From assembly GCA_010909165.1 (NCBI GenBank), contig VJWM01000044.1, forward strand, positions 1,240,001-1,304,000: a stretch of DNA of 64,000 bases. The letters are read 5' to 3'. Positions within the stretch are counted from its first letter, which is position 1, and the number at the start of each line of letters is the position of its first letter. A program made the translations under genes and the position numbers. Origin of the DNA: Anthoceros angustus (lineage: Eukaryota > Plantae > Anthocerotophyta). This document shows positions 28,519 to 60,075 of this stretch, piece by piece. The notes beneath the pieces are model-generated. The model saw only the letters and a list, made by a program, of their open reading frames with translations, was not told where the DNA came from and did no database searches.

Positions 28519-28825
28519 GGTAGCGCACGCAGGGCCCCCGCCCGCCCCCGGATCCGAAGCTGGTCAGGCGCTAGCCGAGGTGGAGAATCGCGAGCAGCGG
28601 TGAGTGCAGGCACAGAAATTGCGTGGGCGTCGGAGAAGCAGGGCGGGCGCGAGGAAGACGCAGCAAGGTGTGCAGACAGGACAGATGGGACTGCGGAAAC
28701 CAGCCCAGGACGCGACACGGCACAGGAGAGAGACTGGCGGAAGAGAAGCCAACAGCGAGAGCGCAAAATAAAACCAGTGGCTGTGCTGTCCCGTTAACGC
28801 AATAATTTATGTACAACCCTCAACC

Positions 28826-30298
28826 CTAGACAAGACGTCTCCTTCCTAATTCACTATGCTCGTCTAGTACACAACATTCCGTAAGATGTCCTGCGAATGA
28901 ATGGTCTGACCCGGCCAAGGATGTCCTACGAATCCAAAGGCAGGAATTGCGGAGGAAGGTGCTGTGTCGATGCCTGCACTCCGTCCCCGCAGCTTCCGAT
29001 GTATCAGAGCTATGCCATGCTAGGGCTGGCCTGGGATGATACATTGGAAGATGAAGAAGCCGACGCTTCCTGATGGAGCTTCCGACACGCCTTCTTCTCG
29101 CCTTCCTCCGCCTCTTCTTCAGAGTCCAGGCTGAAGGGGTGCGCGAAACGACGTCCAAGCGCCCCTCACTTTGCTCCCTTGCCAGCTTTGCCGGTACCCC
29201 GTTTGGAGTGTTGAGAAGCAGACGGGGCTGCGACTCCCAAACGAGGCAGAGGCAAGCGATAAGGAAGATAAGGCACAGGTACATGGACCGGGGCAGGGAC
29301 TCCGACGGCAGGGAGTCTGCACAAACACAAACACAAACACAAACACGGAGCATCAAGTTAGCAATCCAGTCTCTGCATGCAACAAAATAAAGTACAGCCC
29401 ACCACAGCGAAGCACAGGATTAGGAAGCAAACAAGCGGTCTAGAAGCCTACCTCTTTCAAGCGCTGCAGGCTCTGCCCCGACACACACCGGGCCATTGTG
29501 CTTCTTCGCACGTTCCAGCTCTTCCCGGAGAGCCAGATTCTCCATGGCCGTGAAGTTGACAGCTTGCTGAAGCTGGTTGCAGTGGCCCTCGAGCACCCTG
29601 CACTTCGCTTCCAGCTCTTTCACGTAGCATTTCTTCCTGGACCTGGACTGGGATGCTGCTTCCCGATTCCTTATGAGCCTGCAACGGAAGGGGCAGGTGC
29701 GAGGGTTAGGTTGAGCGATGACGGGCGAGCCATGGCTACTTCTACTGTCTACTCACTCTCACCTCAACTGCCTCTTGGCATGAGCTTCGTCCAAGCAGCT
29801 CTCGGCAGTGGTTGCAGCAGCCGGCTCGTCCGCGCTTCCAGTAGTTTCGGTTTCGGTGGCGGCATCTTGGGATCCAGCGCCGTCCACAGGATCGCTCCTA
29901 CGGCGCTTCTGCCCCCTGGAAGCACAGTCCTCGCCGGGGGCTGCAACGCACAGCTGCTGCTCGAAATCGGCATCGGCATCGGCATCGGCATCGGCATCGG
30001 CATCGGCATCGGAGTGGCCGGCATCCGGGTTCAGGCAGGCCTCTCCAGCTCCATCCACAGAATTCCACCAGCCCTCGCTGGCCGCACTCCCGCTGTCACT
30101 GGCAAGCGCATCCGAGCTGCCGAGCTGCTGCTGTGCAGCCGCAGGGATGGTGCCAGCAGGGGGGTTGTCGTCCGGGCACAGGAGCTCGGAAATCAGATCA
30201 TCCCAATTCTCCAACTCTCCATCAACTGCAGCAGCCTCCCACAAAGGTGGCTCTGTAGCCCCCCAAGGACATCCCTCAATATCAAACTGGATGTCCAT
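28826..30298 (-). CDS. bZIP60: bZIP60-type ER-stress transcription factor (membrane-anchored unspliced form; introns 29679-29762 and 29317-29451)
   Basis: Acidic N-terminus; bZIP KRQLR|LIRNREAASQSRSRKKCYVKELEAK...ENLALREEL; AEPAALER|DSLPSESL (cf. angiosperm QESAVL..ESL..GSL); TM helix MYLCLIFLIACLCLVW; basic tail KKRRRKARRR. Confidence 0.9.
29298..29473 (-). promoter_or_regulatory. IRE1 twin stem-loop splice site (predicted 23-nt unconventional intron = 29466-29452 + 29316-29309)
   Basis: After spliceosomal splicing the mRNA reads GAGC-CUG^CAGC-GCUU...GACUCC-CUG^CCGUC-GGAGUC. The two CUG^ sites are exactly 23 nt apart. Confidence 0.85.
29966..30011. repeat. (ATCGGC)n hexamer repeat encoding (DA)n in the bZIP60 N-terminus
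   Basis: About 7 perfect units. Confidence 0.9.
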
Positions 30299-58317: not shown

Positions 58318-60075
58318 TTATCCCTGCATGTCCCTAATAAACTGGGTGTACTGAAGGAGCCCCTCCCGCAACATGTCTCCACTTGCCTCCTCCGGATGCA
58401 ATGTATGGGGCCTTGCCTGTTCAATACCATGATGTGCAGACTGACTCCTGCCAAAATCCTGATCCACTCCAGCAACGTCTAACTCTTTCGAGTCCAACAA
58501 TACATTGTGTAAGCACATGCACGCGGTGATCACCTTTGGAAGGTAGCCGGCAGCCAGACGACTGGGGCGTGCAAGCTCCTGGAATGTTCTCTTCAACACA
58601 AAGAAGGCTTGGTCAATCAAGACCCGACACTGATTGACTCGGTTGTTGAAGTCCTTCTCATCTTCTGTCAAAGACCTCCTCCCATAGTGCTTAAATGGGG
58701 TGATCAACCACTCTAAGTTGGGAAAAGAGTTATCACCCAACAAGTAGCTATGAAGCAGCACACCAGAAGGAAAAGTATTCGGTCGGTCATCAAAGATAAG
58801 ATGGTTGTTGGCCATTTTCCATAGGACAGAGCTTCTTAAAACTTTACTGTCGTGACCATACCCAGGCATACTTACAAACACATCTGTGAATCTCAAATTG
58901 TGATCACATACAGCTTGGACTGTGTGGCTGATAGTCTGCTTCCTGCACTTACGACCCTGTCCGCTCAAGGAAGGCTGCATAATGGAAACATGGGAGCTCC
59001 CAATGCACCCGATGCAGTTCGGTAACCCTGTCCGACTGTGGATGTTGTCCATAATCTCATGCATGTACTGTCCTGAAGGCCACAAAAACTTCTGGCCAAA
59101 GACTTTGACAATGGCAGGAATGATTTCCCTCATGATATCATACACAGTAGCCTTCCCAATGTTAAATGCTTCCGAAGTTTTGGCCAACGTAGATCCATTT
59201 ACCAGCTTGTAAATACATGCAGCCACCTTCAGTTCCACACAGATAGGCTTCTTAAAATTCGTCATCTGCTTAGTGCAATGTGGCCTTAATGCCTCCATGA
59301 TAAAATTGAAGGTACCGATGGACATCCTCAAGTTCTCGATGCACTTTTCATCGTTGCAAATCCCCATCTGATAGTCGTGAAACCAATCCATACCTTTCCG
59401 AGCGCTCCCCGGATCCTCCCCGTTTCTCGCAAGAGCTAGCAGTAGACTGTTGAGGTTTATCTGGTACATGGACACGATGGGCAACAGCCGGGAATACTCA
59501 TCATCCTCTTCATCGCTAACCCTCCTACTGTCATCATCGAGCTCCAGCAGCAGATGCTGCGTTGCGCTATCCTCCCTCTTTCGTTTTTTCCCACTCCACA
59601 CTGCGGGCAGCAAGGAAATAATTTGCTGCAACACTATAACTACCAATCCCAAAAGAACACCCAGTTGCTGGTCCGTTGTGGTCCCATCAGTCGGAGACTC
59701 AGCCATGCCATCAGCTGCTTGAGGCATTCCTGCGGAAAAAGCTCCGCAAAGCCGTGCAATCTCCTGAGACGCAGACGATCCCACAGCATCCATTTCCTTT
59801 GCCGCGAAGTTGACGTCATTGGAGTCCCCTCTCAAAAGCTGTTCGATTTCGTCTGGAATAGAATAGAAGTCACTGGATACAGGCTGAGCACTTGCTGTGG
59901 CAGCGGCTCCCTCCACAGCAAGAAGGGCTGAGTTCTGGTCGCCGTAGTGGGGAATCCGTTCCGCCACAGTGTCTGTCTGCAATCTCAACGTCGGTTCCAC
60001 ACGTCCCGCCAAGACAGCTACCAAGTGAGAGCACTCTCCCTCAAAATGGACACCGGAATGCTGGAAGCTGTCCAT
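58318..60075 (-). CDS. Harbinger transposase-derived protein (HARBI1/ALP1-like, DDE_Tnp_4), intact intronless 585-aa ORF
   Basis: ENLRMSIGTFNFI; ICVELKVAACIYKL + HTH (FNIGKATV); GLPNCIGCIGSSH; QAVCDHNLRFTDVFVSMPG..HD; YLLGDNSFP; WLITPF; FN...RVLIDQAF; ITACMCLHN. Confidence 0.9.
   Translation of the reverse strand: MDSFQHSGVHFEGECSHLVAVLAGRVEPTLRLQTDTVAERIPHYGDQNSALLAVEGAAATASAQPVSSDFYSIPDEIEQLLRGDSNDVNFAAKEMDAVGSSASQEIARLCGAFSAGMPQAADGMAESPTDGTTTDQQLGVLLGLVVIVLQQIISLLPAVWSGKKRKREDSATQHLLLELDDDSRRVSDEEDDEYSRLLPIVSMYQINLNSLLLALARNGEDPGSARKGMDWFHDYQMGICNDEKCIENLRMSIGTFNFIMEALRPHCTKQMTNFKKPICVELKVAACIYKLVNGSTLAKTSEAFNIGKATVYDIMREIIPAIVKVFGQKFLWPSGQYMHEIMDNIHSRTGLPNCIGCIGSSHVSIMQPSLSGQGRKCRKQTISHTVQAVCDHNLRFTDVFVSMPGYGHDSKVLRSSVLWKMANNHLIFDDRPNTFPSGVLLHSYLLGDNSFPNLEWLITPFKHYGRRSLTEDEKDFNNRVNQCRVLIDQAFFVLKRTFQELARPSRLAAGYLPKVITACMCLHNVLLDSKELDVAGVDQDFGRSQSAHHGIEQARPHTLHPEEASGDMLREGLLQYTQFIRDMQG

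What the first reader, a model, noticed from the sequence alone, without database searches (positions are those of the whole stretch)
29166..29473. A spliceosomal intron nested inside the IRE1 unconventional intron of bZIP60: a possible two-step splicing gate on the UPR
Seen: hairpin 1 (GAGC-CUGCAGC-GCUU, 29473-29459) ends exon 2. Hairpin 2 (GACUCC-CUGCCGUC-GGAGUC) takes its first G from the last base of exon 2 and the rest from exon 3. A 135-nt GT-AG intron (29451-29317) separates them. After it is removed, the two CUG^ sites are exactly 23 nt apart (15+8), the length of the Arabidopsis bZIP60 IRE1 intron (established). Excising the 23 nt replaces the TM helix with AVGVPAPVHVPVPYLPYRLPLPRLGVAAPSASQHSKRGTGKAGKGAK* (stop at 29168-29166), which is soluble with a basic tail. 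Inference: the closely spaced twin-hairpin substrate depends on prior nuclear splicing. Intron retention stops at TAA 29420 (…ALERGRLLDRLFAS*), giving a TM-less bZIP without IRE1, a possible IRE1-independent activation route. From memory, angiosperm bZIP60 twin hairpins are in one exon; I cannot confirm whether this split arrangement has been reported.
Basis: partly seen in the sequence, partly recalled or inferred. Interest (0 to 1): 0.88.

Follow-up and report, generated by a model that had tools for sequence, protein, structure and literature searches.

The report
Hornwort bZIP60 gene, split IRE1 site
This is the plant's stress-switch gene bZIP60, and the ordinary intron that sits inside its tiny stress-cut segment is real, but the same layout occurs in every other plant and alga lineage whose DNA was read here, so it is inherited and not a special feature of this genome.

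Summary
On the minus strand there is a three-exon bZIP gene (ATG 30298). Two IRE1-type loops, CUGCAGC and CUGCCGUC, lie either side of a 135-nt GT-AG intron (29451-29317). An RNA contig from the source organism has that intron removed. The cut sites are then 15+8 = 23 nt apart, and removing the 23 nt swaps the membrane helix for a soluble basic tail.

The gene is the orthologue of AtbZIP60/MpbZIP7. The forked twin hairpin covaries across eight taxa, and the shifted-frame tail carries a conserved R-x-PLPR motif.

The split layout is not special to this genome. I read the intron at the same place in genomic DNA of a second close relative, Ceratodon, Marchantia, Diphasiastrum, Selaginella, the alga Closterium and a grass-type contig. 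A dicot-type contig shows the donor. Arabidopsis, where a paper places the 23 bp inside exon 2, looks like a loss.

The "two-step gate" has no specific support. Shuffled introns break the predicted fork as well as the natural ones do. Hairpin 2 survives in pre-mRNA. Intron-retention products differ between species, and none was seen in this organism's RNA.

No held paper mentions the nested intron.

The parts
29763..30298 (-). Exon 1 coding part (ATG 30298-30296), 178 codons plus 2 bases. Acidic N-terminal region with a (DA)n run; the basic region starts at its end (...KRQL-R).
   Evidence: Translation. The RNA contigs X1, X2, X7 and X15 all skip 29678-29761/29679-29762 (84 nt).
29679..29762 (-). 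Intron 1, 84 nt, GT-AG, lying in the basic region of the bZIP domain.
   Evidence: The joint 29677->29762 is seen in contigs of all four runs. The dicot-type contig L006 shows an acceptor at the corresponding place.
29452..29678 (-). Exon 2: bZIP basic region and leucine zipper, the linker, and the 5' half of the IRE1 site.
   Evidence: Pfam bZIP_1, E = 3.5e-10. phmmer hits to bZIP60 orthologues cover residues 1-73.
29473..29482 (-). 5' strand of the base stem (GUCGGGGCAG). It pairs with 29296-29287.
   Evidence: MFE of the in-silico spliced RNA. Covariation across 8 taxa.
29459..29473 (-). Hairpin 1: stem GAGC/GCUU, 7-nt loop CUGCAGC (29469-29463). The predicted IRE1 cut is after G29467.
   Evidence: The loop is CUGCNGN in all 8 taxa, and one stem pair covaries CG/UA/UG.
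29317..29451 (-). Nested spliceosomal intron 2, 135 nt, phase 1, GTAGGC...GTGCAG, with a (GTTTGT)n run before the acceptor. Its in-frame TAA lies at 29422-29420.
   Evidence: Removed in the X1 RNA contig and in the X7 contig of a relative. The same position is seen in 7 other genomic loci.
29298..29316 (-). Hairpin 2 (with G29452 as its first base): stem GACUCC/GGAGUC, 8-nt loop CUGCCGUC (29311-29304). The predicted IRE1 cut is after G29309.
   Evidence: It is paired in 8/8 taxa at 6/6 positions, and 4 pairs vary between taxa while staying paired (3 of them changed on both sides), including the pair that spans the exon junction (GC vs AU in Ceratodon). An 8-nt second loop is the plant norm (PMC3216516).
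29287..29296 (-). 3' strand of the base stem (CUGCCCCGGU).
29237..29284 (-). Hydrophobic/transmembrane segment of the unspliced form (MYLCLIFLIACLCLVW, aa 266-281). It is lost after the 23-nt excision.
   Evidence: Best Kyte-Doolittle 17-mer scores 2.54 in the u form, against 1.22 in the s form.
29166..29308 (-). C-terminal tail of the IRE1-spliced form in the shifted frame (47 aa), with the conserved motif YRLPLPRL and a basic end. Stop TGA at 29168-29166. It overlaps the coding of the membrane segment.
   Evidence: In the part's truncated difference table that was shown, relatives B and C differ at 5 places here, against about 29 in 28923-29162.
29087..29119 (-). Polybasic run KKRRRKARRRR in the unspliced frame, 39 aa after the membrane segment. 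It is a candidate ribosome-arrest or retention element.
   Evidence: Similar runs occur in the orthologues. PMC11077094 reports stalling about 50 aa after the hydrophobic region, with R/K triplets needed. Function was not tested here.
28826..28828 (-). Stop codon (TAG) of the unspliced 417-aa form.
   Evidence: The X1 contig is unbroken from 29312 down to 28800 and runs 637 nt further.

Best explanation
The locus is the bZIP60 (MpbZIP7/XBP1-type) unfolded-protein-response gene of this plant. Earlier scan notes call the plant an Anthoceros hornwort; I did not test that.

How it most likely works:
1. The nucleus removes two ordinary introns.
2. The mature mRNA then folds into the conserved fork: a base stem carrying a 7-nt-loop hairpin and an 8-nt-loop hairpin.
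3. The unspliced mRNA encodes a 417-aa membrane-tethered bZIP protein.
4. Under ER stress, IRE1 cuts after G29467 and G29309, and a tRNA-type ligase rejoins the ends.
5. The 23-nt loss shifts the frame. The result is a 296-aa soluble protein ending in a conserved R-x-PLPR motif and a basic, probably nuclear-targeting, tail.

The 135-nt intron inside the 23-nt segment is an ancestral streptophyte intron. It is kept at the same phase-1 position from zygnematophyte algae to flowering plants and is lost in Arabidopsis. It has to be removed before the compact IRE1 substrate exists. That is simply the normal order of events (nucleus first, cytoplasm second), not a dedicated regulatory gate.

Shown here: the gene model, removal of the intron in RNA, conservation and covariation of the structure, and the dual coding. 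Inferred: IRE1 cutting in this species, nuclear targeting of the s form, and the lack of a gating role.
For: - bZIP_1 domain in exon 2.
- The exon-2 peptide finds, as its best named relatives, Ceratodon, Marchantia MpBZIP7, Riccia, Diphasiastrum, Selaginella 'bZIP50', Ceratopteris, Ginkgo and Cryptomeria, followed by angiosperm bZIP60-type proteins.
- RNA contigs remove exactly 84 and 135 nt.
- The MFE of the in-silico spliced RNA is the forked twin hairpin on a 9-10 bp base stem.
- Across 8 taxa all hairpin pairs stay paired, with compensatory changes, and the loops are CUGCNGN and CUGCNGNN.
- The 8-nt second loop and the 23/20-nt lengths match the published plant rule (PMC3216516; PMC3369818).
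- The s-frame tails share the R-x-PLPR motif and basic ends.
- The u form has the hydrophobic segment and the s form does not.
- The nested intron is at the same position in 7 other genomic loci, and a dicot-type contig shows the donor.
- 45 of 132 motif-bearing representative proteins read through at this codon.
- IRE1-dependent or stress-induced 23-nt excision is published for Marchantia and Physcomitrium, and a 23-nt excision was obtained from a Selaginella construct in tunicamycin-treated protoplasts (PMC11077094).
- Shuffled introns disrupt the fork as much as the natural ones.
Against: - No 23-nt-deleted RNA was seen. Only assembled contigs could be laid, from samples presumably not under stress, and contigs drop rare forms.
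- IRE1 dependence in this species is untested.
- Conservation of the intron across a very deep split (Closterium alga to flowering plants) could reflect selection for some role I could not test.
- The folding probabilities come from a thermodynamic model of short stretches.
- The absence of a report in the papers I could read does not exclude one in papers that are not held (Deng 2011, Takeda 2022, Lu 2012, Hayashi 2012).
Confidence: 0.78

Rival explanations
1. Two-step gate. Removal of the nested intron is regulated, so nuclear splicing controls how much IRE1-competent mRNA reaches the cytoplasm.
For: The fork is predicted only after splicing in 7 of 8 taxa. The intron position is conserved from Closterium to angiosperm-type contigs. 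Intron-retaining isoforms are annotated in Ceratodon, Ceratopteris, Aquilegia and Nelumbo.
Against: Any insertion has the same effect: shuffled introns do as well. No intron-bearing contig was laid in the source organism's RNA at depth of about 82. Arabidopsis works without the intron (PMC4398384). Intron positions in plants are commonly conserved without a function (general knowledge).
Confidence: 0.1
2. Intron retention gives an IRE1-independent, membrane-free active bZIP (264 aa, ending ...ALERGRLLDRLFAS).
For: The in-frame TAA at 29422-29420 truncates the protein before the membrane segment. The Ceratodon annotation carries exactly such a 228-aa isoform in two assemblies. From the literature, a C-terminally truncated AtbZIP60 is active (discussed in PMC3369818).
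Against: The product is not conserved. Selaginella retention is in frame and keeps the membrane segment, and the closest relative runs into a third frame. No retained-intron contig was found in this organism. By general knowledge, such transcripts are usually kept in the nucleus or degraded; this was not tested.
Confidence: 0.06
3. The exon junction marks the site. The exon-junction complex, which sits about 20-24 nt upstream of the junction, would land on the base stem and the foot of hairpin 1. Only mRNAs already read once by a ribosome would then become IRE1 substrates.
For: Geometry only. The junction lies 15 nt after cut 1, so -20 to -24 falls on 29472-29476, inside the 5' base-stem strand. 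The spacing is the same in all 23-nt taxa.
Against: There is no direct evidence. The spacing is fixed by orthology and by the constraint on the structure itself. Grass-type genes have 12 nt rather than 15, and Arabidopsis has no junction at all.
Confidence: 0.05
4. Chance hairpins in an unrelated bZIP gene; not an IRE1 substrate.
For: No spliced (minus 23 nt) RNA was observed here.
Against: There is nucleotide-level conservation, covariation, a conserved shifted-frame motif, and orthology to experimentally shown substrates.
Confidence: 0.01

Closest known systems
MpbZIP7 of Marchantia polymorpha (IRE1-mediated cytoplasmic splicing reported by Takeda et al. 2022, as cited in PMC11077094)
   Same: Same protein family and the same ...EPAAL-xx-DSLPSES motif. 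Same 23-nt segment (15+8), and hairpin 2 has the same letters. A GT-AG intron lies at the identical position inside the 23 nt (L011).
   Different: The Marchantia intron is about 630 nt, against 135 nt here. The bridge sequence and the N-terminus differ. The experimental proof exists for Marchantia only, and I could not read that paper.
AtbZIP60 of Arabidopsis thaliana
   Same: bZIP domain plus a membrane segment. Twin hairpins with a 7-nt and an 8-nt loop. A 23-nt excision shifts the frame and removes the membrane segment (PMC3216516).
   Different: In Arabidopsis the 23 bp lie within the second exon (PMC4398384 Fig. 4A legend), so there is no nested intron. The motif is QESAVLLLESLLLGS rather than AEPAALERDSLPSES.
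PpbZIP60L of Physcomitrium patens and SmbZIP50 of Selaginella (PMC11077094)
   Same: A 23-nt cytoplasmic intron is shown by RNA-seq in the moss and in protoplasts for the Selaginella construct. There is an arrest peptide about 50 aa after the hydrophobic region with essential R/K residues; the window has KKRRRKARRRR 39 aa after its hydrophobic segment.
   Different: Stalling was not tested for this gene. The moss DNA I read was Ceratodon, not Physcomitrium.
OsbZIP50 / ZmbZIP60 (monocots)
   Same: The same fork, and an intron at the same place relative to cut 2 (8 nt before it) in a grass-type genomic contig (L010).
   Different: The IRE1 intron is 20 nt (12+8), because the bridge is 3 nt shorter (PMC3369818). 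The species of L010 is not identified.
Animal XBP1 and yeast HAC1
   Same: IRE1 cuts at CNG^NNGN loops of two hairpins, and a ligase joins the ends without the spliceosome. This switches the C-terminus of a bZIP factor.
   Different: The introns are 26 nt and 252 nt. From memory only, no spliceosomal intron is known inside them. The plant u form is a complete membrane-tethered factor.

Membership tests
bZIP60/XBP1/HAC1-type IRE1 splicing substrates | Encodes a bZIP transcription factor | tested here: met
   Pfam bZIP_1, E = 3.5e-10, 40.3 bits against a cut-off of 27.6, on exon 2.
bZIP60/XBP1/HAC1-type IRE1 splicing substrates | Two adjacent stem-loops with CxGxxG loops, flanked by a closing stem | tested here: met
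   MFE fork at -32.6 kcal/mol in the spliced 80-mer. Loops are CUGCAGC and CUGCCGUC. All pairs are kept across 8 taxa, with compensatory changes.
bZIP60/XBP1/HAC1-type IRE1 splicing substrates | The excision shifts the frame and exchanges the C-terminus (loss of the membrane/hydrophobic segment in plants) | tested here: met
   23 nt. The u form is 417 aa with a hydrophobic 17-mer (KD 2.54). The s form is 296 aa without it, ending in a basic tail.
bZIP60/XBP1/HAC1-type IRE1 splicing substrates | The shifted-frame tail is conserved as protein (dual coding) | tested here: met
   The R-x-PLPR motif plus a basic end is present in the window, its closest relative, Ceratodon, Marchantia, Diphasiastrum and Closterium. 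In the rows shown's truncated difference table, relatives differ little in 29163-29312.
bZIP60/XBP1/HAC1-type IRE1 splicing substrates | Stress-induced, IRE1-dependent removal of the segment in vivo | not testable with these tools
   Only assembled contigs were available, and none lacks the 23 nt.
Land-plant bZIP60 orthologue group (AtbZIP60, OsbZIP50, MpbZIP7) | Sequence orthology through the zipper and linker, up to the IRE1 site | tested here: met
   phmmer gives 26 hits below 1e-10 that cover query residues 1-73. Named members are MpBZIP7, Selaginella bZIP50 and Actinidia bZIP60. No tree was built.
Spliceosomal (U2-type) intron | GT-AG borders, and absence from the mature RNA | tested here: met
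   GTAGGC...GTGCAG. The X1 and X7 contigs join 29452 to 29316.
Regulated 'gate' or intron-retention switch | Retention that is stress-dependent, or an intron sequence that specifically masks the substrate | tested here: not met
   The natural introns are no more disruptive than shuffled ones: 9/25, 5/25 and 6/25 shuffles did as well or better. Retention products are not conserved. Stress dependence itself could not be tested.

The most novel reading that the evidence does not exclude
The spliceosomal intron nested in the IRE1 intron has been kept since before zygnematophyte algae and land plants split because it does something. It could license the mRNA, through an exon-junction complex placed on the base stem or through regulated retention. 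Or it could offer alternative splice sites that reach the active reading frame without IRE1. Some annotated angiosperm models (Vicia villosa 'bZIP50 isoform X2', Gossypium, Mikania) read as if a junction 5 nt short of the normal donor does exactly that.
Probability: 0.1. Interest if true: 0.7.

Novelty: new member of a known kind. Interest (0 to 1): 0.35.

Why it matters
It adds the bZIP60 orthologue of this plant (a hornwort, according to earlier scan notes) to the set of IRE1 substrates. In the one comparative study I could read (PMC11077094), hornworts are not mentioned.

It also shows that the nuclear intron splitting the 23-nt cytoplasmic intron is the general and ancestral plant arrangement, with Arabidopsis the exception. 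Three practical points follow:
- Genome-mapped RNA-seq will show the active form as a 158-nt gap with non-canonical ends, which aligners may drop or shift.
- Primers and gene models built on the Arabidopsis layout will mislead.
- Annotated "isoforms" at this junction need care.

If the intron had a licensing role, it would link nuclear splicing to the unfolded-protein response. Nothing found here supports that link yet.

Tried and rejected
- Joined model left out of searches. The joined protein or mRNA was never sent to a search tool. Joined RNA and protein were built only inside scripts from the stored files, for folding and translation.
- Proteins with no locus. The look-up of encoding contigs gave nothing for P0012 and P0093 and no DNA for Ceratopteris. 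P0059 turned out to be a cDNA.
- Papers not held. Takeda 2022 (PMC9592932) and Deng 2011 (PMC3084119) could not be read, and no supplements are held for PMC11077094.
- Paper searches. Nine searches for any mention of a nuclear/conventional intron inside the bZIP60 cytoplasmic intron found none.
- Unitig ends in run X2. Unitigs ending at 29466 at first looked like a branch made by the spliced form. The pieces that follow still contain 29454-29465, so the branch is a sequence variant, not the 23-nt deletion.
- Pairing of the 5' splice site with hairpin 1. It appears in the window's pre-mRNA MFE, but the complementary letters are missing in the closest relative, so I rejected it as a conserved mask.
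- Mononucleotide-shuffle z-scores of the 96-nt segments are weak (-0.01 to -3.7). The support for the structure comes from covariation, not from energy.

Full report
**The observation.** On the minus strand an ORF starts at ATG 30298.
- Exon 1 runs to 29763 and exon 2 from 29678 to 29452. Between them lies an 84-nt GT-AG intron. Exon 3 starts at 29316.
- The intron 29451-29317 is 135 nt (GTAGGC...GTGCAG).
- Exon 2 carries a bZIP_1 domain (E = 3.5e-10).
- Cuts after G29467 and G29309 leave 15+8 = 23 nt.
- In the unspliced frame exon 3 encodes ...SMYLCLIFLIACLCLVW..., with its stop at 28828-28826.
- After removal of the 23 nt the tail is VGVPAPVHVPVPYLPYRLPLPRLGVAAPSASQHSKRGTGKAGKGAK, with its stop at 29168-29166.
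- The three products are 417 aa (u form), 296 aa (s form) and 264 aa (intron retained).

**RNA evidence.** The one sequencing-run search and the one read-laying run gave assembled contigs only.
- Run X1 is near-identical to the window, with 0.79 of the sampled words. It has a 1614-nt contig lying on 28800-29312, 29452-29677 and 29762-29995.
- That contig skips the 84-nt intron, so it is RNA.
- Exactly 4 letters lie between the first two pieces. So 135 nt are missing there, which fits the predicted junction 29452|29316.
- A contig of a relative (X7, roughly 91-96% identical over the pieces laid) has 6 letters between 29312 and 29454, which is the same junction.
- No contig covers 29340-29447, and none lacks the 23 nt. 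Contigs drop rare forms, so this shows only that both forms are minor in those samples.
- The table of differences was cut short (59 rows were not shown). In the rows shown, relatives B and C differ at 5 places in 29163-29312 and at about 29 places in 28923-29162. There is also a 1-nt deletion at 29028 in X7.
- This fits a doubly constrained overlap of two reading frames, followed by a freer tail.

**Identity.** Joined sequences were made only inside scripts from the stored files.
- The 75-aa exon-2 peptide found 26 representatives below 1e-10 that match right up to the exon's end.
- Named members are Ceratodon, Marchantia MpBZIP7, Riccia, Diphasiastrum, Selaginella "bZIP50", Ceratopteris, Ginkgo, Araucaria and Cryptomeria.
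- Further down come Spirogloea, Closterium, Mesotaenium, Coleochaete and angiosperm bZIP60/bZIP50 proteins.
- All share ...E-P/S-A-A/V-L-(1-3 aa)-D/E-S-L-P/L-x-E/G-S/F.... These residues are encoded by the two hairpins.
- Earlier notes of this scan call the genome an Anthoceros hornwort. I did not test that, but the relatives found fit a non-seed land plant.

**Structure.** The in-silico spliced 80-mer folds into a 9-10 bp base stem (GUCGGGGCAG/CUGCCCCGGU) that carries both hairpins (-32.6 kcal/mol).
- I built the same segment from seven genomic loci and one cDNA and aligned them in a script.
- All 6 pairs of hairpin 2 and all 4 pairs of hairpin 1 are standard pairs in 8/8 sequences.
- Compensatory changes occur in both: CG/UA/AU and UA/AU in hairpin 2, and CG/UA in hairpin 1. 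One of them is GC versus AU at the pair that joins the last base of exon 2 to exon 3.
- The base stem also covaries.
- The loops are CUGCNGN and CUGCNGNN. Nagashima et al. already noted that the second loop has 8 nt in plants, and that the intron is 23 nt in dicots and 20 nt in monocots (PMC3216516; PMC3369818).
- The shifted-frame tails share (Y)R-W/L/V-PLPR and a basic end from Closterium to the window. So that frame is used as protein.
- A polybasic run, KKRRRKARRRR, lies 39 aa after the hydrophobic segment. It resembles the place and make-up of the arrest peptides described in PMC11077094. This is a resemblance only.

**The nested intron is general.** I read genomic DNA around the site in the following loci:
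- the closest relative (L001; intron 104 nt);
- Ceratodon (L002; 350 nt);
- Marchantia (L011; about 630 nt; its exon is identical to MpBZIP7);
- Diphasiastrum (L003; 440 nt);
- Selaginella (L009; 51 nt);
- Closterium (L008; 147 nt);
- a grass-type 20-nt gene (L010; 242 nt).

In each, a GT-AG intron lies 15 nt (12 nt in the grass type) after cut 1 and 8 nt before cut 2. A dicot-type genomic contig (L006) has the donor at the same place, and also has intron 1. Among 132 representative proteins that carry the motif, 45 diverge at exactly this codon, with the G-K/M/T... signature of reading into GT. Of these, 34 are angiosperm-type.

For Arabidopsis, a figure legend states that the 23 bp lie within the second exon (PMC4398384). 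That is most simply a loss. IRE1-dependent or stress-induced excision of the 23 nt is published for Marchantia and Physcomitrium, and a 23-nt excision was obtained from a Selaginella construct in tunicamycin-treated protoplasts (PMC11077094). So the split layout is fully compatible with IRE1 splicing.

**Is it a gate?** In a thermodynamic model, the joint probability of both hairpins is 0.63 in the window's spliced RNA and about 0 in its pre-mRNA. Seven of the eight taxa show the same direction.
- Introns with a shuffled interior do the same. In 9/25, 5/25 and 6/25 trials the shuffled intron was at least as disruptive as the natural one. The effect is generic.
- Hairpin 2 stays likely in several pre-mRNAs (0.96-0.99), because the intron's last G replaces G29452.
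- IRE1 works on cytoplasmic mRNA, which is already spliced. HAC1 shows that IRE1 can handle hairpins that are far apart (general knowledge). An exported intron-retaining RNA might therefore simply lose 158 nt and give the same product. This last step is inference.

**Is retention a conserved route?** Retention products are not conserved:
- a 12-aa tail and then TAA here;
- a long third-frame tail in the closest relative;
- an in-frame 17-aa insertion that keeps the membrane segment in Selaginella.

Intron-retaining isoforms are annotated in Ceratodon (228 aa, two assemblies), Ceratopteris, Aquilegia and Nelumbo. So retention does occur, as it does for many plant introns.

**Literature.** None of the papers I could read mentions a nuclear intron inside the cytoplasmic intron. 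Several key papers are not held, so I cannot claim that it is unreported.

**Verdict.** The object is a bZIP60 orthologue, hence a new member of a known kind. The split IRE1 site is real, but it is an inherited, widespread gene structure. The proposed gate and the retention route remain untested ideas with some evidence against them.

Noticed in passing
window 29960-30010 (minus strand, exon 1): A GCCGAT hexamer run encodes (DA)n. Contigs of the three related organisms (runs X2, X7, X15) are 42 nt shorter here (joint 29960->30003). Many unrelated contigs also land on this repeat and cause depth spikes.
   Followed up: no
window 29321-29353 (minus strand, 3' end of intron 2): A (GTTTGT)n microsatellite lies directly before the acceptor. 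The read tool treated it as a repeat and cut its alignments at 29313, which is why the intron-2 joint is missing from its table of joints.
   Followed up: partly
window 29087-29119 (minus strand): A polybasic run, KKRRRKARRRR, lies 39 aa after the membrane segment in the unspliced frame. Similar runs occur in the Selaginella, Ceratodon, Diphasiastrum and Marchantia orthologues. It may be the ribosome-arrest element described in PMC11077094.
   Followed up: partly
proteins P0148 (Vicia villosa 'bZIP50 isoform X2'), P0107 (Gossypium barbadense), P0125 (Mikania): These annotated models read ...QESAVLL-IPAVGFPALV.... That is the active (shifted) frame, reached without removing the 23 nt, as if a junction 5 nt short of the normal donor of the nested intron were used. 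It could be real alternative splicing or a gene-prediction artefact.
   Followed up: no
run X2 contigs on window 29454-29525: In the related organism B, two pairs of short unitigs with very unequal depth (about 480-500 against 7-12) differ at a few letters within 29459-29495, which includes hairpin 1. This could be a minor allele or a paralogue. The letters themselves were not shown.
   Followed up: no
window 58318-60075: An earlier first-reader note (s1-636949) reports a possibly domesticated Harbinger transposase in this window. I did not look at it.
   Followed up: no
P0037/P0158 (eukprot, Leptophrys vorax): A bZIP60-type protein with the streptophyte motif AEPAVLES is filed under a vampyrellid amoeba. 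It most likely comes from the RNA of its algal prey.
   Followed up: no
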